IMG/VR virus record: IMGVR_UViG_3300029945_000001
Coordinates: 144,375-208,374 of that record
Direction: 5' to 3' (one strand)
Length of the DNA: 64,000 bases
Numbering within the stretch: the stretch's first letter is position 1; each line of letters opens with the position of its first letter. A program made the translations under genes and the position numbers. Below the pieces are notes generated by a model that did no database searches, was not told the DNA's origin, and saw only the letters and a list, made by a program, of their open reading frames with translations. Shown one piece after another: positions 4,714 to 39,401 of the stretch.

Positions 4714-5271
4714 ATGGCTTTTTCAAAATGGTTAGTTTTTAAACATCGTACAAAAGAAATTACGGGAGATATTGATTTATCGAATTATATAATTGGTAAA
4801 CTCGATATCGATGAAAAAGAAGTTGAAACTATTAGTAGTTATATGAATGAACTTATTAAATATGGCGGTATTCCTTATGGTATTAATATGGAGTTTTTAA
4901 TTAAAACTATTAGAAATACTTTTAAATCTACACACATTCCGGCATATATTGTATCTTTATTTAGTGTTATGGTTGGTGAATTTGTTTTATTGAGTCTCAT
5001 TCTACTACAGAAAATAGGATACATTATTGGATTTACGAGATTAACATTTATTTCAGATAAAGTAGATAATTCATATAAGAAATTTAAATTTGGTGTATCT
5101 TTGAATTTATACATTTCTAGAACATATTCTCATACAACAAGTATTATTGGTTTAGTAGTTTTTATTATATTTATTCCAGTATTTGTTATTAAAGATATCA
5201 TAGACTTTATTCGTATGTTTATATATGTTGAGAAAATTAAATATACACGTTTTTCCATGGAGGATCTGTAA
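4714..5271 (+). CDS. Hypothetical membrane protein
   Basis: Two hydrophobic stretches (AYIVSLFSVMVGEFVLLSLILL; IIGLVVFIIFIPVFVI). Confidence 0.55.
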   Translation: MAFSKWLVFKHRTKEITGDIDLSNYIIGKLDIDEKEVETISSYMNELIKYGGIPYGINMEFLIKTIRNTFKSTHIPAYIVSLFSVMVGEFVLLSLILLQKIGYIIGFTRLTFISDKVDNSYKKFKFGVSLNLYISRTYSHTTSIIGLVVFIIFIPVFVIKDIIDFIRMFIYVEKIKYTRFSMEDL

Positions 5272-7688
5272 TGGAGTTTTCATCATCTAAAATTATTAAA
5301 ACAGAATATGTACGTATTATTAATGAGATTACTGATGTTTATACAAAACGTCACATCGTTGATTATAAAAAGAGTATTCTTATACAAGACCTTTATCCAA
5401 ATTTAGATAAATATATGAAAGAAACTTATACTATTGATAAATATCTAAACGATCTTGTTAGTAGATTGGAAGGTAATATTTTTGTTGACTATGTCACTAT
5501 TTATCATGAGTCAAAACGTATTCTTATTTCTATAAATCCTGATGCTATTAAATACGGTGCCGCAAAAGCAAAAACCCTACATATGCAATATGTTACTGAT
5601 TTGTATGGTAAAATTTCTAAAGCTATTATTGATGGCGATGGTAAGATATTTACTGTATATGAATATATGAAAAATAAAGTTTTCAAGGATGTTCGTGAAG
5701 CATTAACAGATTGTCCCCCAACTAAGTATATCACATTTAAATGTTTTGATAAAGAGTTTAAATTGAATGTTGTCGAATATAAACTTATTAAAACAATTAC
5801 TGAAGGTACTAGGGTAATATTCCAGTTTGAGAAATATAATGAAAAATCAACTGATGATGTAGCTAATTATGAACATACATTGAAACGCCTTTCGGATTTT
5901 ATTATTTCTGCATATAATAAAAGAAAGACTAAACTGACAATTAAATCAGGATTGATAGTAGAACTATTGTTAGAGAAAGAAAAATTTGGTATTACTAAAG
6001 ATATTATTAACTATATTAATGAAAAATATGGTTATAGTCTTTTTAATATAAACGAAGCTACATGTATTGTTGTATTCACTAATAATAAGTTTAATAACAC
6101 ACAAGACAACGAGGTCTGCATGACAACGATACAAGAATATACCGAAAATATTTGTAATGTGGCTCGTGAAAAAACTGAAGAATATATTCAAAACATTACT
6201 TCAGGTGATATTATTTCTGGTACTACTTTTATTATGGAAAAAGATAATAACATTGATTTAAATAAAGTTATTAAACTCTTAAAAACTCTTACTATTTATG
6301 CTGAAAAGAAATTCTATCTTAATGATATTGCATATCCTATTGCTAGATATAATGTAAATTTTGATAAATCTGAAGAATGTATTGCGGGTACAAGATTTTA
6401 CTTTAATTTTACTAAAGCAAATATTGATGAAATTAATATGAATCAAAGAATTAAATATGAAGAAAATTTGAAGATTAAAGAAGCTATACATACACTTAAA
6501 TCCGAAACAGATCATTTTAAACATATTAAAATTACTAGTAATAAATATGTCTGCGATGAACTTTATAAACATAAACAATATATTGAAGAAGTATATAACT
6601 TTGTGACATTGTGGGGTGTGACTATAGATGGTGAACAACTAAGTATTACTTTTCATCGCTTTTGTTTACTGGCAAAAAAGCCGTATCGTGTTAAAATAAT
6701 TTTACATAATGAGAAAGAAAAATTAAATAAAAAATCTGAATATAAAACTACTGGTCGTGAAGGTACAGAAGGTGTTATTGAACATATCGTTCCAGATAGC
6801 TATGTACATGTTGATGAGAATGACCACTATTCAAAGTTTAGAGACATTTGTAATCAGATTGTTCTTAAAGCTTGTAAAATTGGTGAAGATGTTGTTAATG
6901 ATAGTAAATTTAATATTATACATACAAATGATATCCATGTCCAAACTACTGAACTTAGTTTTCTTAAAATAGATGATATTATTAAATATATTAAGAATAA
7001 ATCTATTTATGTTGAGGAATATTTTACTATAAACGATATTAAATATCCTATTCGTAAGTATGGTTTGAAGTATAGAAGTTATAGTAATGATTGTTTTATA
7101 TTTAGTATTAGGGTAAAACCACCAGAACTTATTGAGTGGTCAGAACATCATACATACTCTAACAATATTGATTTGAAAACAATACTTGGAACCTTGGTAC
7201 TGAGAAAAGATATACCGAGCAAATGTAATACTAATGAAATCGTAATTAGTAATCCTTATATTGTTAAAGAACTAGTTAAACATCATAAGTATATTGAGAA
7301 GATTACTAATTGGAAGCTGATGAGCTATATAGAGGATTGTGTTACATTTAAATACTTTGATGATTATGATAAAGTTGAGAAAAACACCAGTCCTACCATT
7401 AAAGTAGATTATACAGATAATCTTATTAATTATAAAACTTATATTAAAGAATTCCGTAAAGATATGGATGCTGTTGCTTTTATTAATATACTTCTTCGTT
7501 CCAGTATATTTGTTTTAAATAATAAACATATTGGTCAAGATTTTCATCAGTCTTCATACATTATTGATATTATTGGAGATGATGTATATGATAAATTAAC
7601 TCCAGAAGTTAATGAAATCTTTAATAACAATGATTATTATACTGGTGATATGGATGAAAATGGTATTCGTATTAAATTGAAGAAATAG
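5271..7688 (+). CDS. Hypothetical 805-aa protein with internal repeats and an embedded RNAP-beta-like segment
   Basis: Long ORF coupled to the upstream stop. Repeated F-x-x-N-D-I-x-Y-P-I / EL-x-KH-x-x-YIE units. Contains YKTTGREGTEGVIEHIVP. Confidence 0.75.
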   Translation: MEFSSSKIIKTEYVRIINEITDVYTKRHIVDYKKSILIQDLYPNLDKYMKETYTIDKYLNDLVSRLEGNIFVDYVTIYHESKRILISINPDAIKYGAAKAKTLHMQYVTDLYGKISKAIIDGDGKIFTVYEYMKNKVFKDVREALTDCPPTKYITFKCFDKEFKLNVVEYKLIKTITEGTRVIFQFEKYNEKSTDDVANYEHTLKRLSDFIISAYNKRKTKLTIKSGLIVELLLEKEKFGITKDIINYINEKYGYSLFNINEATCIVVFTNNKFNNTQDNEVCMTTIQEYTENICNVAREKTEEYIQNITSGDIISGTTFIMEKDNNIDLNKVIKLLKTLTIYAEKKFYLNDIAYPIARYNVNFDKSEECIAGTRFYFNFTKANIDEINMNQRIKYEENLKIKEAIHTLKSETDHFKHIKITSNKYVCDELYKHKQYIEEVYNFVTLWGVTIDGEQLSITFHRFCLLAKKPYRVKIILHNEKEKLNKKSEYKTTGREGTEGVIEHIVPDSYVHVDENDHYSKFRDICNQIVLKACKIGEDVVNDSKFNIIHTNDIHVQTTELSFLKIDDIIKYIKNKSIYVEEYFTINDIKYPIRKYGLKYRSYSNDCFIFSIRVKPPELIEWSEHHTYSNNIDLKTILGTLVLRKDIPSKCNTNEIVISNPYIVKELVKHHKYIEKITNWKLMSYIEDCVTFKYFDDYDKVEKNTSPTIKVDYTDNLINYKTYIKEFRKDMDAVAFINILLRSSIFVLNNKHIGQDFHQSSYIIDIIGDDVYDKLTPEVNEIFNNNDYYTGDMDENGIRIKLKK
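6741..6821 (+). repeat. Dispersed repeat, near-copy of 55127-55207 (RNAP beta catalytic-lysine region)
   Basis: First 24 nt identical; 49/54 and 68/81 identical by manual alignment; same reading frame. Confidence 0.9.
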
Positions 7689-9665: not shown

Positions 9666-11987
9666 TTAAGCCTGGGGATCAGTCTCATCGATTTCAGCAT
9701 CGGCATTAACTAAGGCCTGACCGACACCATCGACACCTGAAGTCAGAACGCCATCGTTGCCAACCAGAGGATTGTTGTTCACCTGGATGGATTCAGACAA
9801 CATCAGCTTCAGAATGGCATCGAGACCCTTAACGCTGATGATCATGCCGATCGGGTTCGTCGGGTAGACGACCTCACGGCTGTTGGCGACAGCGCGCTGA
9901 GTCACGGCCATGGCGTTGTTGAACGTGAACTTGCCGGCGAAGATGCCACGGTCCAGATTCTTGCCAAAGCTGATGACGCTTTCCGGGTCAGCATCGCGAA
10001 CCGGGACGATGAGCATCAGACCTTCAAAGTTCTTGTACGACGTGGCGACGCAGTCGATGCGTGAGCCGTTCGGAAGATAGAAGCTGTAGTCTGCCGACGG
10101 AGCTTCTTCGACGCGAGTGTCGTTCAGTTCGTTGAAGTAGGTTTTGATGGCCAGCAGGGTTGCAATGATCGTCGGGGTGGTGACCAGACGATACACAGCC
10201 TTTTCGCCAGGGTTCAGCTGGTTCAGGTACAGCGAGGTCAGCTGCGAGTCGGCGATGATCGCATTCAGACGATTCATAACCAGCGAATGCATGTCCGAGT
10301 TACGCTCGGTTTCACGCATAACGACGGCATTGGAAACGTCCAGAACACCACGCCAGACATTCGGGTTACACAGAGTGCCGGCCAGGAAGTCCTGAGCCAC
10401 CGAATTGTACCAGTCGATGAGGGGATCGGTTTCCTCGTGCTTCAGGCGATTGTAGACGTTGTTCAGGCACTCGCCGATCATGCGAACGGCCTTGGCATCA
10501 TTGCCCAGCGACATGATATCATTGAGGATCTTGATGATGTCTTCGGCCGACTTGCCTTCAGTGTCCTTGATGCTGTATTCGGCGGTGTACATGCGAGACA
10601 CGGGAATATAGAAGGACTGCTCCTTCTGTGTCACGCGAGCCGAAATATTCGCCTTGCGCATATTTTCTTCGCTGTACTGGGCGAAGGGTTCGAAAGCGAA
10701 CAGCGAGAAGGACAGCTTGTTGTAAGCAGTATTCACGGCATCCGCAACGGTCGTGCCGGCGGCAGGGAAAAGCTGGGCGTTCAAGCTACCATAGCCTGTC
10801 GAGGCGCCGGTCTTGAGGTTAAGCTTCATGGTGAAGTTGAGATCGATTTCGGCACCGGCGTCACCAAGAACAGACAACAACGATGACGCAGTGCCCGCAG
10901 CGGTAACAGCAGTCGAAGGAATGACACGCTGGATACGAGGAGCTGCTTCACGATCGGCCGAGTCGTTCGTGTTGGTGCGCTGCACCAGACGCGAGGCTGC
11001 CTGATATTCGGTACGAACAGGGATATATTCCGTGGTCGTGCCGTCGGTGACGGCGATCCAGACTTCGCGAACATAGGCGCCTTCGCCGATGATGTCAGTC
11101 CAGTTCAGATTGTCGTAGCCGACGGTGTTGGAGCTGACGCCGAGCTTGAACATGTTGAACGGCACGCCGACCTTAACCAAGTTCTGGTGAACCAGGACAG
11201 GGTTGGTCGAATCGTCGTTTTCCATGAACAGTTCGACACGTTTGGCGGTGGTGTCGACGAACGAAGGATCGCGCATCAGCCGGATCAGAGGAGTGCGAAT
11301 GGCGTTCGAATAGCGAATATCGGCGTTCGGGTTCTGCGAAGCAGCCAGATCGTAAACATCGCCATTGGCGATCTTGGTGACGACGACGGTTTCTTCGGTA
11401 GCGATGCGCGGCAGGATACGATCGATCAGCGACTTGAAGACGCGCAGCATGGTCAGCGAGATCGACAGACGAACATCGGTGACGACGCTATCGATGCCTT
11501 CACCGAACGACTCGCCGGCAGCGATATCGTTAGTGACAGCATTGACACCACCATTGCCGAACAGCGAGCCCAGAGCGATGCATTCGGTTCCGGCAACGCC
11601 GCCCTTGGCATCAGCAAAGTTGGCATTGGTCGAATGCAGATGCCCCATGACACCAAGCGTAGCAGCTTCGATGGCCGCCGCAATGCGAGGATTGGTACGA
11701 TCCAGACGATTGTTCTGGGTCGAGCCGCTCATCGATTCGATGGTACCGATGACGAAGTTTTCAACGGCGGCCAGGTCGATGCGCTCTTCAGCGCCACGAA
11801 TGACGGTCATCGGCTTGTCGAAATATTCCAGGCCGGCAGCATTGGTGACCGAAGCAACCAATGAATTCGAACTCAGAAATGATTCTGTCGCCGCAGCCAG
11901 AGTGAACGCAGCACCCAGAGACAGACCGCTGTTCTGGGCAACACCACGCAGCTGCTGCTTCCATGAATTAAGTTTGCTCATTGTCAA
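9666..11987 (-). CDS. Major capsid protein precursor (phiKZ gp120-like)
   Basis: 773 aa, strongly GC-biased codons, candidate A/S/G-x-E head-protease sites (AATE-SF, AAGE-SF), divergent from DnaB with one intervening gene as in phiKZ gp118-120. Confidence 0.8.
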   Translation of the reverse strand: MTMSKLNSWKQQLRGVAQNSGLSLGAAFTLAAATESFLSSNSLVASVTNAAGLEYFDKPMTVIRGAEERIDLAAVENFVIGTIESMSGSTQNNRLDRTNPRIAAAIEAATLGVMGHLHSTNANFADAKGGVAGTECIALGSLFGNGGVNAVTNDIAAGESFGEGIDSVVTDVRLSISLTMLRVFKSLIDRILPRIATEETVVVTKIANGDVYDLAASQNPNADIRYSNAIRTPLIRLMRDPSFVDTTAKRVELFMENDDSTNPVLVHQNLVKVGVPFNMFKLGVSSNTVGYDNLNWTDIIGEGAYVREVWIAVTDGTTTEYIPVRTEYQAASRLVQRTNTNDSADREAAPRIQRVIPSTAVTAAGTASSLLSVLGDAGAEIDLNFTMKLNLKTGASTGYGSLNAQLFPAAGTTVADAVNTAYNKLSFSLFAFEPFAQYSEENMRKANISARVTQKEQSFYIPVSRMYTAEYSIKDTEGKSAEDIIKILNDIMSLGNDAKAVRMIGECLNNVYNRLKHEETDPLIDWYNSVAQDFLAGTLCNPNVWRGVLDVSNAVVMRETERNSDMHSLVMNRLNAIIADSQLTSLYLNQLNPGEKAVYRLVTTPTIIATLLAIKTYFNELNDTRVEEAPSADYSFYLPNGSRIDCVATSYKNFEGLMLIVPVRDADPESVISFGKNLDRGIFAGKFTFNNAMAVTQRAVANSREVVYPTNPIGMIISVKGLDAILKLMLSESIQVNNNPLVGNDGVLTSGVDGVGQALVNADAEIDETDPQA

Positions 11988-17686: not shown

Positions 17687-17792
17687 ATTTGAAATAAAAA
17701 ATACATATATATTAATATGTAGAGAAGACTGGTTAAGAACGCGTCTTGATCAGTCTATTCTCTAAAATCCGTTAAAATTGGGAATTAAATAA

Positions 17793-19088
17793 ATGCACTT
17801 TGATATTTCCACGCTGACTGCTGACGCTTTGACTTCTGCTACCATGATTGGTACTCTTGTTTCGGAGTCCGCAGCCCCCCTCATCGACTGGGACAGCATG
17901 CGCAAGGAGATCGAATCCTGGCCGCTGGTCTCGGAGGTGCCGCAGGACAAGGACGTTCCGCAGCTGAACATGACTTCGATCACCGGCAAGACCTGCCGTG
18001 AGCTGGTCAAGGGCGGCATCAAGACCGAGAATTTCATCGCCATCATCAAGTCGATGCTGAATGTCCGCGCCCATGTCATGTCCTCGAACGCCGGCAAGGC
18101 CCAGACTCTTTATCCGACCGTGAACGAATATGGCGCCCGTGAAGTCGGCAATGTCATCGTCGTCGCCAACAAGCATGCCGGCAAGCCCCGGTCGATCAAC
18201 ATCAATCGCCAGGCTTATGACCATCCGAAGAATGCCAATGACGAGACCCGTGGTCGTCAGCGGCACGTCAGCTGCGTCGTCGAAGTCGGTGGCTATATCG
18301 GTTTCGCTTTCTACAACAAGTTCTCTCCGAACACCCTGATCCAGACTTTCTTCCAGGTCACGCATGTCATTCCGCTCGGCGGCGACAGCAAGCTGTTCGA
18401 AATCGGCATGACCCTGGTTCATGCGGCGTTCGCTTCGGCCGCCGACGGCAAGGTCCTGGCCACTCCTCTGGAAGATGATACTCCGCTGGCCAATCTGATC
18501 GATGCGATGCAGCGTCGTTTGGCCGTCGGTGCTCTTCAACTGGATTGGCCGCTGTACAGTCAGATCTTCGTTCCGCATTTCGGCCTGAAGAATGACACCG
18601 CCGCCGGCATCGCCAAGATCGATCATTGGAAGGATCTGCACTCCGACACCGTGACTGCCAATCTCGACAAGCCGGTCAGTGCCGACATCACCGACATTGA
18701 AATCGATCTGATGCACAATCTGGTCGAAGCGCGTGCCACCTCCACGCCGAAGACCGACGGCGATGGCAATGCCGTCTATGATGAAACTGCTCTGGTCATC
18801 AGCCATCACATGGACGACACCGGCAATACCATCCGTGCGATGATGACCCTGATCAACAACAACGAAACCATCTGGACCGGCGTCACCGACATCACGGCCA
18901 ACAACTTCGATCGTCCGGTCGGTGATGACATCACCTATCCGAGCGGCAAGTTGAAGGCGGCGGTTCTCGATCCGGCCCTGATTCTCGGCGCCACCACGTT
19001 CCAGCGTCTGAAGACCGACGTCATCAATCGTCAGGTCGAAGGAAAGCATCCTGTGGAGAACCCGACCATCCTGGGCATTCTGCGTTAA
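17793..19088 (+). CDS. Hypothetical, probably highly expressed 431-aa protein
   Basis: GC-rich codon use like MCP and chimallin, AT-rich flanks, strong terminator downstream; no recognised motif. Confidence 0.75.
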   Translation: MHFDISTLTADALTSATMIGTLVSESAAPLIDWDSMRKEIESWPLVSEVPQDKDVPQLNMTSITGKTCRELVKGGIKTENFIAIIKSMLNVRAHVMSSNAGKAQTLYPTVNEYGAREVGNVIVVANKHAGKPRSININRQAYDHPKNANDETRGRQRHVSCVVEVGGYIGFAFYNKFSPNTLIQTFFQVTHVIPLGGDSKLFEIGMTLVHAAFASAADGKVLATPLEDDTPLANLIDAMQRRLAVGALQLDWPLYSQIFVPHFGLKNDTAAGIAKIDHWKDLHSDTVTANLDKPVSADITDIEIDLMHNLVEARATSTPKTDGDGNAVYDETALVISHHMDDTGNTIRAMMTLINNNETIWTGVTDITANNFDRPVGDDITYPSGKLKAAVLDPALILGATTFQRLKTDVINRQVEGKHPVENPTILGILR

Positions 19089-19107
19089 GCAGAAAACCAA
19101 CTAAAGT

Positions 19108-25976: not shown

Positions 25977-26135
25977 CTATTTAGTGAGACCTAAAATAAG
26001 CCCAGTTCCTGTTATGGTAGCATAACTTATGCCCACAATACAATTACCGGCAGCACCGCCACCAGATCCAGAATTTCCAAGACCGTCGTCAGTACCACGA
26101 GATCCAGCCTGACCGAAATCGCTCCATCCGCCAGC
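25977..26135 (-). pseudogene. Orphan C-terminal remnant of a second gp38-like glycine-rich adhesin
   Basis: Manual translation: AGGWSDFGQAGSRGTDDGLGNSGSGGGAAGNCIVGISYATITGTGLILGLTK*. Aligns with the end of 26309-27034 (GGPPGYAITGISNVTWIAKGTILGPTQ*). No own start or RBS. Confidence 0.75.
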
Positions 26136-26296
26136 TAAGACGCTTCCGCCTGCCGGCGTTGCTGAAGGCGAGCCGACATTTCCGACAAGACTTCGGGATG
26201 AGCCAGGATGTAGTGGTGCACGGCGGCATCGAAGCCGTATTTGCCCAGCACCAGGCCCATCGATGCCGCTGCAATAAGGTGAAAACGTGATTTCAT
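26135..26296 (-). pseudogene. 53-aa truncated DsbA-family-like N-terminus (signal/anchor plus YILAHPEVL helix)
   Basis: RBS aggaga overlaps the adhesin stop; MKSRFHLIAAASMGLVLGKYGFDAAVHHYILAHPEVLSEMSARLQQRRQAEAS*; GC-rich; no thioredoxin CxxC domain follows. Confidence 0.6.
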
Positions 26297-26308
26297 TTCA
26301 AATTTCTC

Positions 26309-27034
26309 CTACTGCGTCGGGCCAAGGATCGTGCCCTTAGCTATCCAAGTCACATTTGAAATGCCGGTGATCGCATAACCGGGCGGGCCACCGTTCCCGC
26401 CGCCGTTGTATGATCCGACAGACCCGTTTTGGCCGTACGCACCGGGGGCTCCCCCAGCACCACTGGAACCAGCACCAGAGGTGCCGCCGCCCTGAGCGCC
26501 GCCACCTACCGACAGGGTTCCTGAATTGCCGGCGCCGTTATATCCGTTTGACGGACTCCATCCGGGAACTGCCCCTGCGCCGCCGCCACCGTTGCCGCCC
26601 CAGCCATAAGTCGTGTATTCACATCCGCCACCGCCACCACCACCACCGCCACTCTGGATCGTGCCTAAATTTGTGATTGTGATTTTCTGCAAGGTGGAAA
26701 TGGCAGGGCCACCGCTGCCACCGCTACCGCCACCGCCATCACCACCACCGCCACCGCCGCCCTGGCCGCCGGCACCTACAATATAAGCACCAACCATTAC
26801 ATTAAGAGAAATATTAGAACTAGCAGGAAAACTATTGATAGTTAGTGCATACGTACTTGTTGATATCGATCCGATAATTGCAGATGAAGCAATATTTAAT
26901 TTGACATTAATAGGATTTTTACCATTCCAACCATAATTAGTAGTAAGATCAGTATTTAATACGTAATTATAAATAGTTCCAGATAAATTTATTACTACTG
27001 ATTGTACAGAGCTGGCAGGATTGAGTATAAACAT
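26309..27034 (-). CDS. T2/T6 gp38-like glycine-rich receptor-binding adhesin
   Basis: beta-rich N-terminus then GAGGQGGGGG / ITNLGTIQSGGGGGGGG polyglycine repeats and a terminal GYAITG..VTWI..GTILG motif. Confidence 0.8.
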   Translation of the reverse strand: MFILNPASSVQSVVINLSGTIYNYVLNTDLTTNYGWNGKNPINVKLNIASSAIIGSISTSTYALTINSFPASSNISLNVMVGAYIVGAGGQGGGGGGGDGGGGSGGSGGPAISTLQKITITNLGTIQSGGGGGGGGGCEYTTYGWGGNGGGGAGAVPGWSPSNGYNGAGNSGTLSVGGGAQGGGTSGAGSSGAGGAPGAYGQNGSVGSYNGGGNGGPPGYAITGISNVTWIAKGTILGPTQ

Positions 27035-27036
27035 AG

Positions 27037-27087
27037 TTAATAAACTTTTTTGTTTGAATAGAATTCTAATCTATTTAAAATATACAT
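27037..27087 (-). other. 16-codon upstream ORF carrying the strong RBS (aggagga), out of frame with the adhesin
   Basis: MYILNRLEFYSNKKVY* stops 2 nt before ATG 27034; contains an A6 run at 27046-27051. Confidence 0.6.
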
Positions 27088-27114
27088 AATGATTCCTCCT
27101 AATAGAAATACAGA

Positions 27115-27123
27115 TCATATAAT
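27115..27123 (-). promoter_or_regulatory. Putative late promoter ATTATATGA
   Basis: TATG core as in phiKZ late promoters; same 9-mer at 37610, 58085 and 60600, all intergenic. Confidence 0.45.
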
Positions 27124-27131
27124 GGATTTAA

Positions 27132-27164
27132 AGATAGGAGAAGGCGCGATACCTTCTCCTATCT
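27132..27164 (-). terminator. Terminator hairpin
   Basis: agataggagaagg-cgcgata-ccttctcctatct. Confidence 0.7.
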
Positions 27165-27177
27165 CATATCAGTTGTC

Positions 27178-27698
27178 TTAAGAACCCCAGATATTCCGTC
27201 TATTTTCAGGAAGATTATCTCTATCAATATAAACAGGAATATATCCAGTTTTCATTTCAAAAGCAAGAACAAAAGGAACAATATAAGAAGTATAATTCAT
27301 TTCACAATTTTGATCAAAGAGTTCACCGTATAACGACATACAAGAACCAGTACAAATACCAACAACAGGACATGATTTACAATTATCTCTTTGAGACCAG
27401 TGAGTAATTGCATCTAATTTAACATTAGTAATATCAGTAATAGATCCACGTTGTGTGATTTTCCATTTAAAGCAATATCAAGACTGCTAGCATTAGGGCA
27501 AGAAATAATATTACCTGACATATCAACAGCTAAATAAAAAGCACTATTCATATTACAGAAATTATAACTGGTTATCTGACTTTCATCAAATAGAACATAT
27601 GTTTTATCTCTGATGAAACTAATGATATTGCCAAGATTAAAATTAGCATAACTTTTATCGTTTGTCCAATCGAGTGTTTTTTTGAGTATCTTAGTTAT
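27178..27698 (-). pseudogene. Radical SAM/SPASM protein C-terminal remnant, 5' deleted and frameshifted
   Basis: Manual translation: NFCNMNSAFYLAVDMSGNIISCPN...NGKSHNV [-1 shift near 27447] GSITDITNVKLDAITHWSQRDNCKSCPVVGICTGSCMSLYGELFDQNCE...RNIWGS*. CxxCx5Cx3C SPASM motif; no start codon. Confidence 0.8.
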
Positions 27699-27750
27699 TT
27701 AAATTAGCAGCAATATTTACCATAGTAATTGTTCCTGTATTTTCTGCCAC
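27691..27750 (-). pseudogene. 19-aa N-terminal stub of a small tail-tip gene
   Basis: RBS aggaga, GTG start, MAENTGTITMVNIAANLNN*; resembles MAL..SGAISMS.I..EL starts that follow chaperone-bearing fibres. Confidence 0.4.
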
Positions 27751-27818
27751 AGTATATGTCTCCTGTGTCTCTATGGTTGATACTATATATAATTTATTCT
27801 ATACGATAAATTGTAAAA

Positions 27819-27858
27819 GTTAAGGATAGGATGAGCCTAGGCTCATCCTATCCTTAAC
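27819..27858 (-). terminator. Perfect 40-bp palindrome/terminator
   Basis: gttaaggataggatgagcct|aggctcatcctatccttaac. Confidence 0.7.
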
Positions 27859-27871
27859 CACATAAAATAAA

Positions 27872-29062
27872 TCATTTATTTTCTATAATTGACAATCGTC
27901 TATCTATATCTTTTATTGCTTCTACAATAATACCCATCATATTTCCATAAGCAACACTTAATGTATCATTATTATTAATGACAACTTCTGGTAAAACCTT
28001 TTGAATATCCTGGGCAATAAGACCAGACTGGCGTTCTCCAGTATCTATACGAGTGTATGTATATCCAGTCAATTGTTTAATCTTACTGATAGAATCCTCA
28101 ATAACTTTTAAATCTTTCTTTAATTTAATATCAGAATATGCAGTAAGATTTGCCAGTGCCACTAAGTTACCAGAAGTATCAATAGTCATTAGTGCATTTC
28201 CAGCATCGGTATTGTCCATAATTCTGAAATAGCCATTACTAGCATCAATAAATTTATCAGCCGGTGTTGTTCCAGTACCAACAACCCGAATAGAATTAAA
28301 TGGAGTATTGGAATTTGCACTCACATTAGATGTATAATCTTCTAATGTAGTATTTAATACTGTCGTTGATACATATTCGGAAAGATCAATGTTTGCTAAA
28401 GCTGTAGCTAATGCAGTATTCGTTACATAGTTCTGTAAAGTTGCTGTTAGTATTTTATTTGTTACATAATCAGTTAAATATGTACTAATATTATCAGACA
28501 TGACATAATCGCCAGCAGGGCTATATTCAGCCAATATTTTATTTAATGCATCTAAAGTGACATAATCCAATAATGTAGTATCAAGATCGGTGATTTTTTC
28601 ATAACTATTTAAATCTTGTATAATCTGAGCAATACTGCTATCAACTGATTGTTCGAATGTAACAAGTTCGTTTGTTAAATCTGATTGTCCAGTACCAACT
28701 GTCTGTGTAATCTCTGATAGAGCTGTTGTGATAGCAGCATTCACAAACCTGGTATTGGCAGCGCCAGATGAATTATTATCAGTAGCAAGATCTGGAACAT
28801 TACAACTTTCTGTAAAGGTAGCATTGGTTGTATCGGCTTTCGAATTTAAAATATTGAAAAGATTAATATAATCATTTATATTACATAATGTTTTTAAATT
28901 GGCATAAAGTGTAACACCATCACCTATTTTAATGATACCCGTGCTACTATCTATAGTAATTAGACCATATGGAATAGGAACTGATGTATTATTCCAATCT
29001 GCTTGTGTGGCATTTAATCTTTGAAAAATACCTTGAATAACTATGGGTGTTGACATAGACAT
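27872..29062 (-). CDS. Tail fibre with Mtd_N/hyaluronidase-type N-terminus and Peptidase_S74 intramolecular chaperone
   Basis: N-terminal T.ADW...PIPYGLITID...KIGDGVTLY..L; LxDYVT repeats; C-terminal YSDIKLKKDL...IKQLTGYTY...GLIAQDIQKVLPE...VAYGNM...VEAIKD. Confidence 0.88.
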   Translation of the reverse strand: MSMSTPIVIQGIFQRLNATQADWNNTSVPIPYGLITIDSSTGIIKIGDGVTLYANLKTLCNINDYINLFNILNSKADTTNATFTESCNVPDLATDNNSSGAANTRFVNAAITTALSEITQTVGTGQSDLTNELVTFEQSVDSSIAQIIQDLNSYEKITDLDTTLLDYVTLDALNKILAEYSPAGDYVMSDNISTYLTDYVTNKILTATLQNYVTNTALATALANIDLSEYVSTTVLNTTLEDYTSNVSANSNTPFNSIRVVGTGTTPADKFIDASNGYFRIMDNTDAGNALMTIDTSGNLVALANLTAYSDIKLKKDLKVIEDSISKIKQLTGYTYTRIDTGERQSGLIAQDIQKVLPEVVINNNDTLSVAYGNMMGIIVEAIKDIDRRLSIIENK

Positions 29063-29078
29063 ATACTTCTCCTATCTC

Positions 29079-30161
29079 TTAAACGAGTTCATTGATTGAA
29101 ACACCAGTATTGACCAATAATTTATTAACAGAATCATAAGCAAATGACAAGACACATATTCCTGTTAATGTAGGAATAGATCCTTGAGGAAAGAATATGT
29201 TTGTAGACCAATTAGGACTATAACCATTTGAGTAAATCATTAACTGATATGTAGCATTTGGAACAGGATTACAAAATGCTATATTGCAGTTTCCTACTAA
29301 TGTAACATTAGCACTCTGCCACATACTTAAATCCCAAGTTATATTTGATGAAAACTGTATAGGACCTCCGGCTGGAGCCTGTACGGCTTTCCAAGTGTTA
29401 GGTTTATCCAGTTTCGCAGTTTTTTCTAACTGACCATATATCTGTATTGCTGTTAAGTAATTACTTAGAGTACTGGACAATGTATTTGTTGATACATAAT
29501 TCTGTAATGCAGATGAAATAGAGTCATTCATAAAATCTGTTGTAGAATACTCACTTATTATTGAATCGAAAGACGATATTGATAAATATTCTTGCAAAGT
29601 AGACGCCAATATAATGGATGTTACATAGTCAGTAAGAGTTTCGGCTAAGACTACATTTGTTACATAATTATTTAAAGTATCTGTAAGATCGGCTGTTTTT
29701 ACATAGTTTCCAATAGTACTAAGAAATATATTAGTTGTGACAAATGTATCTGCCGTACCACTAATGGCTCCAGATAATTCATCATAGAGTGTTTGTAATG
29801 CAGCCGTTACCCATTTTGTATTTGCAGCATATAAACTATTATCTCCACTAGGAGGGGTAGGGACTTCAACACTGTTTTGAAAAATAGGATCTTTAATAGG
29901 AGCATATGATGAGACATCTCCCAATGCAATAAGGTCAGCAACAGTAATTATAACAGGAAGATCTCCGTATAGGGAAGTACCATCGCCTAATTTTATATTT
30001 CCATCTGATGAAATAACAACAAGACCATAAGGAATAGCAACATTAACATTTGACCATGTTTGATCACTACTTGCTATTCTTTGTATTAATCCATTAATAG
30101 GAATAACATTTGGTTCTGTCATAGAAAAATCCTTCCTTAATACAGGTAGAAAATTATTCAT
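29079..30161 (-). CDS. Tail fibre paralog (same N-terminal domain and DYVT repeats, different tip)
   Basis: DQTW..VAIPYGLVVIS..KLGDGTSLYGDLP; APIKDPIF..VEVPTPPSGDNS..ANTKWV; tip ITWDLSMWQSANVTLVGN. Confidence 0.8.
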   Translation of the reverse strand: MNNFLPVLRKDFSMTEPNVIPINGLIQRIASSDQTWSNVNVAIPYGLVVISSDGNIKLGDGTSLYGDLPVIITVADLIALGDVSSYAPIKDPIFQNSVEVPTPPSGDNSLYAANTKWVTAALQTLYDELSGAISGTADTFVTTNIFLSTIGNYVKTADLTDTLNNYVTNVVLAETLTDYVTSIILASTLQEYLSISSFDSIISEYSTTDFMNDSISSALQNYVSTNTLSSTLSNYLTAIQIYGQLEKTAKLDKPNTWKAVQAPAGGPIQFSSNITWDLSMWQSANVTLVGNCNIAFCNPVPNATYQLMIYSNGYSPNWSTNIFFPQGSIPTLTGICVLSFAYDSVNKLLVNTGVSINELV

Positions 30162-37814: not shown

Positions 37815-39401
37815 ATGTCTAGTGTTTCCGGTTTTGGTACTCAGGAAAGCGATTCTCCCAAGGCTCCGCAGGGCGAAAAGCAGGCTCCTGGTTTCAGCAA
37901 TTCTCAGCAGGAAAAGAAGCGTTCTCTCCTGCACAGTTCATTGTCCGAATTTGACAGCTTCTCGACGCAGTCCCCGCAGCTATCGAAGTTCGTCGAGCGT
38001 ATGGAAAAGGAAATCCCCGGCGCCAAGGTCGTTCGCATCCCTGAGCCGTCCAACACTCTGGCGGTGATGGTCGACAACATGTTCTATGTTCTGCTGTTCC
38101 CCGACATGGGCGTTCAGTTCGGAACTCTTGAATTCAAGCGCAAGGCGTTCATCGCTTATTTCCCGAGCGTTCGCAAGCGCCTCGAAGCTGATTTCGCGAA
38201 TTGCACCATCATTCAGAATGCCATCGTCATTCCCGAAGACTACCAGAACGAAACTCGCGTCGGCGCCATCATCGCCCATCTGCGGTCTACGTTCTCGGCG
38301 AACAAGCCTGGCAATCTGGATGTCTACGGGTCGATCAGCTTCTTCAAGGGTTCGACCTTGACGATCTCGACGTCGTTGGCTGAAGTCCACAACTACTACG
38401 ATCGCCATTGGCCGTTCGTGACCAAGCCGCGTTTCGACTACGGCATCGTTGTCAGCTCTCCTGTTCGTGACGAACTGTCGGTCTCCAACAACGAACCGAC
38501 GGAACCGAAACAGCTGTTCGTCGTCGGCGGCTACACCAGCTTCGTTCGGACCAATCCTCCGAACAACTCATTGGCTCGCGAAAAGCTTCCGCATGTTCTG
38601 GCTCCGATCGTGCACATTTCTTCTGTGTTCTCGATCATGCCGATCAATGCCTTCGCTCCTCTCGCCATCGGCCTGGGTGGGTCGAAGTTCCTCTATGATG
38701 GTCTGTGGCTGTCGCCTTATACTTCATTCGAAAGCGGAAAGCCGAACCTCGGCCGCCTGATGCCGGATGTTCTGGACAACAGCCGCAATGAACTGATGTC
38801 GTGCGACAACATGGACGACGTTAAGCAGTTCGTCCAGATCGCCTGCTTGACTCCTGTTCTGGCTATCGATAACATCCCTGGCGTTCCGACGCTGTCCATG
38901 CTCAAGCTGTTCATGGACGATGGCAACAACAAGCGGGTCATCGATGCCTTCAGTGACTTTATGGGCAAGCCGTATGATGGCAATAGCGACATCTTTTCGG
39001 TCGCTTCGACGGTCATCACCGGCATCGTCAACTACCCTGACAGCCCGACCGATAGTCGCGTCGTCGACTATATGTCACTGGTCAGCGGTAAGGGATATCC
39101 TGCTGAGGAAATCTCGAACCTGCTGGACGTCTATGAGAACCAGCATTACCAGGCTTCGATTGTCGCCAAGCATTCGAAGTTCATTCCGCTGTCGTACAAC
39201 ATTGTCAGCATCCTGAAGCCGTCTTTTGTGCAGGCCCTGGTCAATGCTATCAACAACGGCGTGACCATCAAGCAGTCCAACAGCAATACCAGCAGCAGTA
39301 ACACCAACTGGCTGATCGATATGGCCAAGGGCTATAGCGAGGCTCGTCTGAGCATGGGTGCCAATACTGTCGAAGGTGGTCTCGGCGGCATGTACCTGTA
39401 A
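37815..39401 (+). CDS. chmA: Putative chimallin (major phage-nucleus shell protein)
   Basis: Immediately upstream of the nvRNAP beta-prime N-terminal subunit gene, as phiKZ gp54-gp55; strongest GC codon bias class; disordered N-terminus; own terminator. Assigned by synteny, not alignment. Confidence 0.72.
   Translation: MSSVSGFGTQESDSPKAPQGEKQAPGFSNSQQEKKRSLLHSSLSEFDSFSTQSPQLSKFVERMEKEIPGAKVVRIPEPSNTLAVMVDNMFYVLLFPDMGVQFGTLEFKRKAFIAYFPSVRKRLEADFANCTIIQNAIVIPEDYQNETRVGAIIAHLRSTFSANKPGNLDVYGSISFFKGSTLTISTSLAEVHNYYDRHWPFVTKPRFDYGIVVSSPVRDELSVSNNEPTEPKQLFVVGGYTSFVRTNPPNNSLAREKLPHVLAPIVHISSVFSIMPINAFAPLAIGLGGSKFLYDGLWLSPYTSFESGKPNLGRLMPDVLDNSRNELMSCDNMDDVKQFVQIACLTPVLAIDNIPGVPTLSMLKLFMDDGNNKRVIDAFSDFMGKPYDGNSDIFSVASTVITGIVNYPDSPTDSRVVDYMSLVSGKGYPAEEISNLLDVYENQHYQASIVAKHSKFIPLSYNIVSILKPSFVQALVNAINNGVTIKQSNSNTSSSNTNWLIDMAKGYSEARLSMGANTVEGGLGGMYL

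What the first reader, a model, noticed from the sequence alone, without database searches (positions are those of the whole stretch)
27178..27750. Hidden radical SAM/SPASM pseudogene and deletion scar inside the tail-fibre cluster
Seen: the apparently empty 27.1-27.8 kb gap encodes a SPASM domain (CKSCPVVGICTGSC...C) with a single-base frameshift near 27447 and no N-terminal radical SAM core. It abuts a 19-aa stub with its own RBS and GTG (27691-27750). Inference: a deletion fused the start of a tail-tip gene to the end of a radical SAM gene. Radical SAM/SPASM enzymes are peptide and protein maturases, so the ancestral cassette may have chemically modified the fibre or the glycine-rich adhesin, a poorly described system that is decaying here.
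Basis: partly seen in the sequence, partly recalled or inferred. Interest (0 to 1): 0.6.

Follow-up and report, generated by a model that had tools for sequence, protein, structure and literature searches.

The report
Dead radical SAM gene beside tail fibres
The "empty" gap holds the broken last third of a radical SAM/SPASM enzyme gene in a peat jumbo phage. Its intact relatives in hundreds of phages always sit just downstream of tail-fibre proteins that end in a Cys-Asn repeat, which points to an undescribed chemical maturation of phage fibres.

Summary
On the minus strand, 27698..27417 and 27477..27181 are two stop-free frames. Joined at a 1-base frame break at 27447, they match positions 300-430 of a 451-position phage radical SAM/SPASM family (phrog_1802; E 1e-48). 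All 7 SPASM cysteines are kept. The CxxxCxxC core (about 250 codons) is absent. Independent peat-metagenome assemblies carry the identical sequence, so this is a real pseudogene.

This copy is dead, but the same phage keeps an intact 444-aa paralogue elsewhere, directly behind a 175-aa protein carrying CNCNCNC repeats.

Across IMG/VR, 51 of 53 family loci with enough upstream DNA have a same-strand tail-fibre or tip ORF ending in (Cys-Asn/Asp)n. In the reverse test, all 21 C-terminal CNCNCNC tails with at least 4 kb downstream are followed by this enzyme. A 2OG-oxygenase-like gene is a frequent partner.

The likely substrate is therefore a Cys-Asn tail, not the glycine-rich gp38-like adhesin. 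The 19-aa stub weakly resembles the N-terminus of the Cys-Asn-repeat proteins (p about 0.04), which fits a deletion of about 1.2 kb but does not prove it.

I found no paper describing this system.

The parts
27181..27477 (-). Distal piece of the relic (99 codons; stop TAA at 27180..27178). It holds the CX2CX5CX3C block, the last SPASM cysteine and the family's C-terminal tail.
   Evidence: Family HMM positions 343-430, E 8e-36. TIGR04085 SPASM 21.9 bits, E 1.7e-4, below the 27-bit cut-off on its own. 42% identity to RSP15 ORF045 residues 342-429. 55% identity to the phage's own intact paralogue.
27417..27698 (-). Proximal piece of the relic (94 codons, other frame). It holds the first two SPASM cysteines (C..G....C) and the linker before them. 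The first ATG/GTG/TTG comes only after the first cysteine.
   Evidence: Family HMM positions 299-343, E 6e-12, envelope from residue 6. BLASTP to P0002 extends the homology up to residue 18, about 27647. ORF list.
27445..27449 (-). Frame break: the last codon of the proximal frame (GTG 27449..27447) and the first of the distal frame (GGA 27447..27445) share base 27447, so one base is missing.
   Evidence: The tblastn segments end and start at 27447 and are contiguous in both intact homologues. The break is identical in independent runs.
27691..27764 (-). Stub: AGGAG (27764..27760), 9-nt spacer, GTG 27750..27748, 19 codons, TAA 27693..27691. It is in the same frame as the distal piece. It is a possible N-terminus of a lost Cys-Asn-repeat protein gene, and the deletion or recombination junction lies at about 27690-27700.
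   Evidence: Sequence. It aligns N-terminally anchored to the Cys-Asn-protein family profile with p 0.04 (shuffles) and 13/2373 (window 19-mers). There is no other copy in the 208-kb genome.
27819..27858 (.). Perfect 40-nt palindrome directly after the S74 fibre gene, a likely transcription stop that separates the fibre gene from the stub and relic.
   Evidence: It matches itself on the opposite strand at 100%. The simple terminator scan did not call it because there is no T-run.
27872..29062 (-). Upstream neighbour: a tail fibre with a C-terminal Peptidase_S74 intramolecular chaperone domain.
   Evidence: PF13884 E 3e-13. 24 tail-fibre PHROGs, best 2.8e-34.
26309..27034 (-). Downstream neighbour: a glycine-rich gp38-like adhesin. 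It is a chimera: codons 1-60 have native composition (GC3 0.15) and codons 61-241 are GC-rich (GC3 0.51).
   Evidence: PF05268 28.8 bits, cut-off 25. Tail-fibre PHROGs. Composition.

Best explanation
The gap holds a non-functional relic of a second copy of a phage radical SAM/SPASM maturase gene (family phrog_1802). Only the last ~170 codons survive, from the linker to the natural stop. A 1-base deletion at 27447 splits them into two frames. The SAM-cleaving CxxxCxxC core (~250 codons) is gone, and so is whatever gene preceded it.

The most likely history is partly inferred. The fibre cluster once carried a cassette of the type 'protein with a C-terminal Cys-Asn repeat, then radical SAM/SPASM enzyme', as in this phage's own intact locus and its closest relatives. 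A deletion or recombination of about 1.2 kb then joined the first 19 codons of the Cys-Asn protein gene, out of frame, to the enzyme's 3' third. This may have happened when the fibre tip was refitted with the partly foreign gp38-like adhesin next door. The relic has no function now.

In intact cassettes the enzyme most probably modifies the (Cys-Asn/Asp)n tail of the fibre or tip protein. By analogy with its nearest curated families, the modification would be thioether cross-links between Cys sulfur and Asn/Asp carbons. A 2OG-Fe(II) oxygenase-like partner often accompanies it. This chemistry is inferred, not shown.
For: Shown:
- Relic identity and break point (E 1e-48 to a family HMM built here).
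- All 7 SPASM Cys are kept and the 3 core Cys are absent.
- There is no start codon before the first Cys.
- The sequence is identical in independent assemblies.
- The relic has native composition, GC3 0.14-0.22.
- The same phage holds an intact 444-aa paralogue with CNFNCSYC at 5377-6711 of a 208-kb sibling contig that is 100% identical to the window over 20 kb. It scores PF04055 2e-13 and phrog_1802 4e-53.
- The relic groups with that paralogue (support 0.88) inside a clade with P0002 and P0003 (0.98). The relic's branch is about twice as long.
- It still keeps 37/74 highly conserved columns, against 42/74 for the intact copy.

Family context:
- 460 IMG/VR contigs encode a relative.
- 70/82 loci examined have annotated tail genes within 7 ORFs.
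- 51/53 loci with at least 3 kb upstream have a same-strand ORF ending in (C-N/D)n-C. None of 60 has one downstream.
- Reverse test from a blind DNA-pattern scan: 36/61 in-frame CNCNCNC ORFs are followed by the enzyme. So are all 21 with a C-terminal motif and at least 4 kb downstream. The 5 negatives have the motif far from the C-terminus.
- In the phage's own genome the pattern occurs only in the 175-aa ORF that ends 17 nt before the intact enzyme's GAGGAG-ATG.
- The closest relatives show the same pairing, next to Peptidase_S74 fibre proteins.
- Nearest curated models for the family are PapB, QhpD and Cys-rich-peptide maturases, all far below their cut-offs.
- The -1 neighbour folds as a prolyl-hydroxylase-like DSBH (pLDDT 79, Foldseek prob 1.0).
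- One family member is fused to PF13640.
Against: - No relative with an intact copy at this position was recovered, so the deletion is reconstructed, not observed.
- The stub's similarity to the Cys-Asn-protein N-terminus is weak: p 0.04 anchored, 0.21 unanchored against shuffles. A pairwise test was not significant.
- The relic's sister relation to the intact paralogue rests on about 170 columns and long branches.
- Enzyme-substrate pairing is inferred from gene linkage only. The complex prediction gave no verdict.
- RSP15 has the enzyme without a Cys-Asn tail.
- In this jumbo phage the intact pair lies between RNA polymerase subunit genes, not in a fibre cluster.
Confidence: 0.75

Rival explanations
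1. There was never a full gene here. Only the 3' third of a radical SAM/SPASM gene was brought in as a passenger by illegitimate or mosaic recombination during exchange of fibre or adhesin modules. The 19-codon ORF is a chance ORF or the start of an unrelated gene.
For: The locus is visibly mosaic. The adhesin 150 nt downstream switches from GC3 0.15 to 0.51 at codon ~60. It is followed by 330 nt of 53% GC DNA holding a 53-aa fragment of a bacterial ScsC-type gene (PF18312 2e-11). The stub similarity is only marginal. No intact orthologous locus was found.
Against: The relic has the phage's own composition (GC3 0.14-0.22). Its nearest relative is the phage's own paralogue. The natural stop and C-terminus are intact. 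The stub has a good AGGAG-N9-GTG and aligns at the expected N-terminal offset to the protein family that precedes the enzyme in the closest relatives.
Confidence: 0.2
2. The relic is still expressed as a small stand-alone SPASM-type iron-sulfur protein, by starting at the internal ATG (27551) and shifting frame by -1 at 27447.
For: Both frames are free of stops and all 7 cysteines are kept. The sequence is fixed in every sample examined.
Against: The only start codon lies after the first cluster cysteine. The break site (AAC GTG GAT) is not a slippery heptamer, by direct reading of the sequence. There is no SAM-cleaving core to serve. The one RNA run has contigs on both flanking genes but none on 27109-27815, which is weak evidence at low depth. 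The relic's branch is twice as long as the intact copy's.
Confidence: 0.03
3. The frameshift or the truncation is a sequencing or assembly artefact, and the real genome has an intact gene.
For: A single-base difference in a short G run is a classic error type.
Against: The sequence is identical in six assembled contigs from different samples. It is also identical in contigs of two runs not flagged as the source, with no indel reported. The missing ~750 nt of core cannot be an indel error, because only 173 nt separate the relic from the fibre gene's stop.
Confidence: 0.02

Closest known systems
phrog_1802 'radical SAM domain-containing protein' (e.g. Ralstonia phage RSP15 ORF045, Achromobacter phage JWF gp030)
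   Same: The relic is homologous to their last ~130-160 residues (35-48% identity). It has the same 7-Cys SPASM pattern and the same C-terminal tail ending (..LPE.RR.I(F/W)G). JWF gp030 and most metagenomic members also sit in tail-fibre clusters.
   Different: These are intact 445-455-aa proteins with CxxxCxxC. The relic lacks the first ~250 codons and is frameshifted. None has a described function.
Radical SAM/SPASM peptide maturases that make Cys-to-Asp/Glu/Asn thioethers (PapB ranthipeptide maturase NF047865, QhpD TIGR03906; NxxcB from my own knowledge)
   Same: They are the best-scoring curated models for the intact family members (E 4e-15 and 6e-14). They share the two-domain architecture. 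Their substrates are rich in Cys next to Asp/Asn, like the CNCNC/CNCDC tails.
   Different: Scores are far below every equivalog cut-off (56 against 340 bits), so the family is not a member. The presumed substrate is the C-terminal tail of a 100-700-aa virion fibre or tip protein rather than a small leader-bearing peptide. No chemistry has been shown.
Anaerobic sulfatase-maturating enzyme anSME (PDB 4K36-4K39)
   Same: It is the only solved structure whose sequence aligns over both core and SPASM regions of the intact paralogue (residues 77-398, E 7e-7). It acts on a protein, not a peptide, and JWF gp030 was first annotated as this enzyme.
   Different: The score is well below TIGR03942's cut-off (44-51 against 349 bits). 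No sulfatase is encoded nearby.
T-even gp38 adhesin with a fibre that needs helper genes (tail-fibre tip cassettes)
   Same: The relic lies between an S74-type fibre gene and a gp38-like glycine-rich adhesin. That is the position where phages keep tip adhesins and their assembly helpers.
   Different: gp38 systems use chaperones, not redox enzymes. The gp38-like protein has a single Cys and no Cys-Asn repeat, and it shows no link to this enzyme family in other loci.

Membership tests
Radical SAM superfamily (PF04055) | CxxxCxxC motif binding the SAM-cleaving [4Fe-4S] cluster, within a partial TIM barrel | tested here: not met
   There is no counterpart of the three invariant cysteines (family columns 153/157/160). 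No family-HMM match to positions 1-298 exists in any frame of 26900-28000. Pfam gave no hit on either piece. The relic descends from the family but cannot be a working member.
SPASM domain (TIGR04085 / 7-Cys auxiliary cluster motif) | C-x9-15-G-x4-C, gap, C-x2-C-x5-C-x3-C, gap, C | tested here: met
   All seven cysteines that are invariant in 74/74 full-length relatives are present, spread over the two frames.
SPASM domain (TIGR04085) | Score at or above the curated cut-off (27 bits) | tested here: inconclusive
   The distal piece alone scores 21.9 bits (E 1.7e-4) and the proximal piece gets no hit. The joined read-through could not be sent to that library. Intact homologues pass with 31.5 and 34.5 bits.
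phrog_1802 phage radical SAM/SPASM family | Significant profile match, collinear with full-length members | tested here: met
   phrog_1802 matches at E 2e-10 and 5e-4 for the two pieces. An HMM built from 74 members scores the read-through, with X at the break, at 153.6 bits, E 1e-48, positions 300-430 of 451.
Functional gene | One uninterrupted frame with a start codon and ribosome-binding site | tested here: not met
   There are two frames. A stop lies immediately upstream of the proximal piece (27701..27699). The first start codon is at 27551, after the first cluster cysteine.
Cys-Asn-tail plus radical SAM/SPASM cassette (defined here) | A same-strand ORF ending in (C-N/D)n-C within ~0-5 kb upstream of the enzyme gene | tested here: not met
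   The pattern TGYRAYTGYRAYTGY is absent from the window's 104.6-kb record. In the 208-kb sibling contig it is present only next to the intact paralogue. The upstream S74 fibre has no such tail.
Cys-Asn-repeat protein family (N-terminus M-TL..SGAISLS.VNTE.G) | The stub matches the family's N-terminal profile better than chance | tested here: inconclusive
   The best alignment is at the expected offset. p is 0.04 (anchored shuffles), 0.21 (unanchored) and 13/2373 for start-anchored 19-mers of the window. Only four family sequences were available.

The most novel reading that the evidence does not exclude
Many phages post-translationally modify a (Cys-Asn/Asp)n tail at the C-terminus of a tail-fibre or fibre-tip protein. 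They use a dedicated radical SAM/SPASM enzyme, often together with a prolyl-hydroxylase-like 2OG oxygenase. This would be RiPP-type chemistry applied to a virion receptor-binding structure. The window's relic would then be what is left when a fibre tip of this type was replaced by a gp38-like adhesin that needs no such enzyme.
Probability: 0.5. Interest if true: 0.8.

Novelty: new variant of a known kind. Interest (0 to 1): 0.6.

Why it matters
The relic itself is an ordinary pseudogene. Its value is as a pointer. It led to a large family of phage radical SAM/SPASM enzymes that sources name only 'uncharacterized' or 'radical SAM protein' (at least 590 protein clusters, 460 viral contigs). The family's linkage to fibre proteins ending in Cys-Asn repeats is nearly perfect in both directions.

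If the enzyme cross-links or otherwise modifies that tail, phage receptor-binding fibres would be a new class of substrates for RiPP-type radical chemistry. That would bear on fibre stability, host recognition and engineering of phage host range.

It is directly testable in cultured phages (Achromobacter phages JWF and 2-1). The locus also documents module replacement at a jumbo-phage fibre tip, with a helper gene left to decay.

Tried and rejected
- Megablast of 26000-29100 against cultured phages found no match.
It was replaced by the two-protein alignment.
- Search for diverged syntenic relatives, using the conserved 588-aa neighbour and the distal piece in metagenome contigs, returned only identical copies of the same phage and one remote hit. 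The intact ancestral locus could not be recovered.
- Cultured relatives of the phage are remote (21-25% identity to phiKZ-like virion proteins).
- The stub DNA has no second copy in the genome.
- Pairwise stub comparisons with the N-termini of the Cys-Asn protein and the enzyme were not significant.
- HMMs of the conserved neighbours of other loci (C2, C3, C4, C16, C21) found nothing in the window or at the phage's intact locus.
- Complex prediction of the intact enzyme with the C-terminal 86 residues of the 175-aa Cys-Asn protein gave no verdict (score 0.00). It is neither support nor evidence against.
- The fold search of the -2 neighbour (C4) gave only weak Ig/FN3-like matches (TM below 0.3) and is uninformative.
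- The word search with the 175-aa protein found only 2 relatives.
- Six literature searches found no paper describing a radical SAM enzyme tied to tail fibres or a CNCNC motif. That is absence from the held library only.
- The large representative-protein search was not used, because the word search and family scans settled the relic's identity.
- The careful tree run did not finish. The quick tree was used, and a second FastTree with broader sampling was added.

Full report
WHERE THE WINDOW COMES FROM. The window is part of an IMG/VR virus record of 104.6 kb, estimated 46% complete, with about 29% GC. A 208,374-bp sibling contig (91% complete) is 100% identical to the window over the 20 kb compared (window position + 144,374). 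A 229.9-kb JGI contig also carries the identical stretch. The phage encodes phiKZ-type split RNA polymerase beta subunits and a PhiKZ-type major capsid protein. Its virion proteins are only 21-25% identical to cultured phiKZ-like phages. It is therefore a distant phiKZ-like jumbo phage. Public runs that hold it are all peat metagenomes.

THE OBSERVATION. On the minus strand, 27698..27417 (94 codons) and 27477..27181 (99 codons) are free of stops in two different frames. With the local composition a stop is expected about every 12 codons, so such runs have probabilities of about 4e-4 and 3e-4.

tblastn against cultured phages places the two pieces back to back on intact proteins: residues 305-341 then 342-429 of Ralstonia phage RSP15 ORF045 (446 aa), and 305-344 then 345-433 of Achromobacter phage JWF gp030 (454 aa). 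Both alignments end and start at base 27447. Read directly, the last codon of one frame (GTG 27449..27447) and the first of the other (GGA 27447..27445) share one base. One base has therefore been lost.

These homologues carry Radical_SAM (PF04055) and pass the SPASM model TIGR04085 (31.5 and 34.5 bits, cut-off 27). They reach no curated equivalog. They belong to phrog_1802 (E 1e-78).

I built an HMM from 74 full-length members. It scores the read-through, with X at the break, at 153.6 bits (E 1e-48) over positions 300-430 of 451. BLASTP to the nearest database protein extends the homology up to about 27647. All seven SPASM cysteines, invariant in 74/74 members, are kept. The three CxxxCxxC cysteines have no counterpart, and no frame between 26900 and 28000 matches the first 298 profile positions.

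The 19-codon stub exists as described: AGGAG 27764..27760, 9-nt spacer, GTG 27750..27748, TAA 27693..27691. The proximal frame opens at 27698, directly after a stop.

IS IT REAL DNA? Six assembled contigs from different samples are identical. Contigs of two runs not flagged as the possible source span the relic with no difference and no indel. One RNA run has contigs on the adhesin's 5' end and on the S74 fibre gene but none on 27109-27815. That is weak evidence, at low depth, that the relic is poorly transcribed or not transcribed.

SURROUNDINGS. The gene order on the minus strand is as follows:
- a fibre-like protein (29079..30161)
- a fibre with a Peptidase_S74 chaperone domain (27872..29062)
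- a perfect 40-nt palindrome (27819-27858)
- the stub and the relic
- a gp38-like glycine-rich adhesin (26309..27034; PF05268 28.8 bits)

The adhesin is a chimera. Codons 1-60 have the phage's GC3 of 0.15 and codons 61-241 have GC3 of 0.51. The GC-rich tract runs on for 330 nt and contains a 53-aa fragment of a bacterial ScsC-type gene (PF18312, E 2e-11). The relic itself has native composition, GC3 0.14-0.22. The fibre tip region has therefore been rebuilt by recombination with foreign DNA, right beside the relic.

AN INTACT COPY IN THE SAME PHAGE. Searching the sibling contig with phrog_1802 found, besides the relic, an intact 444-aa gene at 5377-6711. It has CNFNCSYC, PF04055 at 2e-13 and phrog_1802 at 4e-53. 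It lies between two RNA polymerase subunit genes.

It is the relic's nearest relative: 48% identity over 135 residues, 55% over the last 88, and 66% DNA identity over 230 nt. In a tree of 83 sequences the relic is its sister (support 0.88), inside a clade with two metagenomic proteins (0.98). The relic's terminal branch is twice as long, 0.95 against 0.45. An earlier quick tree agreed but had long branches. The relic still keeps 37 of the 74 columns that are at least 90% conserved, against 42 for the intact copy. It was a working gene for most of its history and was lost fairly recently.

WHAT THE FAMILY DOES: GENE CONTEXT. 460 IMG/VR contigs encode a relative. I examined 82 loci: the best 80 plus RSP15 and JWF. 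In 70 of them, annotated tail genes lie within 7 ORFs. These include gpJ-like, DUF1833/gpL-like, NlpC-P60/gpK-like, tape measure and tail-fibre PHROGs.

The decisive pattern is different. In 51 of the 53 loci with at least 3 kb of upstream DNA, a same-strand upstream ORF ends in (Cys-Asn/Asp)n-Cys, for example CNCNCNCNC, CNCDCNC or CNCNCDCACCC. The motif lies 0-5 residues from the stop in 53 of 55 cases, at a median 1.5 kb before the enzyme gene. None of 60 loci has such a motif downstream. The only exception is RSP15, counted twice. These ORFs are the tail-fibre clusters C3 and C16. In JWF the motif sits in gp028, a fibre protein, directly before a Hint self-cleaving domain.

I then ran the test in reverse with a blind DNA-pattern scan of IMG/VR for CNCNCNC (120 stretches). 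In 61 the motif is in frame in an open frame of at least 60 aa. Of those, 36 are followed on the same strand by a family enzyme gene (E at most 1e-20). All 21 with a C-terminal motif and at least 4 kb of downstream DNA are positive. The 5 clear negatives have the motif far from the C-terminus.

In the peat phage itself the pattern occurs only in the 175-aa ORF that ends 17 nt before the intact enzyme's GAGGAG-ATG, and nowhere in the window's record. The relic's closest relatives show the same pairing next to S74-domain proteins. In locus L118 the order is Cys-Asn protein with Hint, then enzyme, then a 211-aa S74 protein. In locus L120 the order is an S74 fibre, then a 176-aa Cys-Asn protein, then a 262-aa protein, then the enzyme.

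The most common -1 neighbour (cluster C2) has invariant His98 and His178. Its model (pLDDT 79, pTM 0.81) matches prolyl-4-hydroxylases, PHD2 and related 2OG-Fe(II) oxygenases (Foldseek probability 1.0, TM about 0.6). One family member carries a C-terminal PF13640 2OG-oxygenase domain.

MECHANISM. Shown: homology, truncation, frameshift, the paralogue, and the two-way gene linkage. Inferred: the enzyme acts on the Cys-Asn/Asp tail. The nearest curated models (PapB, QhpD, Cys-rich-peptide maturases) make thioethers between Cys and Asp/Glu. From my own knowledge, a related enzyme (NxxcB) links Cys to Asn. Thioether cross-linking of the tail is therefore the most economical guess. An anSME-like oxidation is the alternative. 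The complex prediction gave no verdict.

THE STUB AND THE DELETION. Four Cys-Asn proteins share a conserved N-terminus. The stub aligns to it at the offset expected for a true gene start. The significance is only p 0.04 against anchored shuffles, 0.21 unanchored, and 13/2373 against start-anchored 19-mers of the window. Together with the gene order in relatives, this favours a deletion of roughly 1.2 kb, running from codon ~19 of a Cys-Asn protein gene to codon ~250 of the enzyme gene. The junction would be out of frame, which explains the immediate stop. It is not proven. Import of a 3' fragment during module exchange remains possible.

COMPARISON AND NOVELTY. The relic is a descendant of phrog_1802 and of the radical SAM/SPASM class. 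It fails the defining radical SAM feature, so it is filed as a pseudogene. Sources name the family only 'uncharacterized' or 'radical SAM protein'. Six full-text searches found no description of a tail-fibre-linked radical SAM enzyme or of the Cys-Asn tail. The object in the window is ordinary. The system it points to looks like an undescribed variant of radical SAM/SPASM maturation, acting on virion fibre proteins.

VERDICT. Observation confirmed. Interpretation partly supported: the pseudogene and the fibre linkage hold, the deletion-fusion is plausible, the substrate is probably a Cys-Asn tail rather than the glycine-rich adhesin, and an intact cassette persists elsewhere in the phage. Interest 0.6, driven by the family-level association rather than by the relic.

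Noticed in passing
window 25981-26850 (adhesin codons 61-241 and the 330 nt after it); ORF 26135..26296 (-): A 55-68% GC island sits in a 29% GC phage. The gp38-like adhesin switches from GC3 0.15 to 0.51 at about codon 60. The non-coding tract behind it holds a 53-aa fragment matching the N-terminal domain of bacterial copper-resistance protein ScsC (PF18312, E 2e-11). It looks like a recent import of a receptor-binding module with a scrap of bacterial DNA.
   Followed up: partly
window 9666..11987 (-), 17772..19100 (-), 37815..39401 (+): Three further ORFs are strongly GC-rich (GC 0.54-0.56, GC3 0.57-0.71) amid genes with GC3 0.15-0.20. One of them is the PhiKZ-type major capsid protein (PF25620, E 8e-15). 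Such a compositional split inside one phage genome is unexplained.
   Followed up: no
window 27819-27858: A perfect 40-nt palindrome lies directly after the S74 fibre gene. It is a probable terminator, but it has no T-run and the simple scan did not call it.
   Followed up: no
L101:5095-7509 (sibling contig of the same phage, positions 5095-7509): The intact enzyme sits in a four-gene block (98 aa, 175-aa Cys-Asn protein, enzyme, 91-aa protein with a CC pair) between two RNA polymerase beta-subunit genes. That is an odd place for a presumed fibre-maturation cassette.
   Followed up: partly
L012:5812-7260 (JWF gp028) and L118:3855-4730: In some phages the Cys-Asn repeat is followed by a Hint (intein-like) domain. 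Self-cleavage would then leave the repeat at the mature C-terminus. This mirrors the S74 self-cleaving domains on neighbouring fibres.
   Followed up: no
P0055 (660 aa, from the protein search): One family member has the radical SAM/SPASM part (residues 1-435) fused to a C-terminal PF13640 2OG-Fe(II) oxygenase domain. This fusion supports a functional link between the two enzyme types.
   Followed up: partly
L112 (Ralstonia jumbo phage RP12, record positions 84042-89152): Three radical SAM genes lie in a row in a cultured phiKZ-like phage. One is 28% identical to the peat phage's intact enzyme. Their role is unknown.
   Followed up: no
window 26717-26764: The glycine-codon repeat of the adhesin attracts many unrelated GC-rich contigs from the peat runs, seen as a depth spike and loose ends. 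Depth there is not informative.
   Followed up: no
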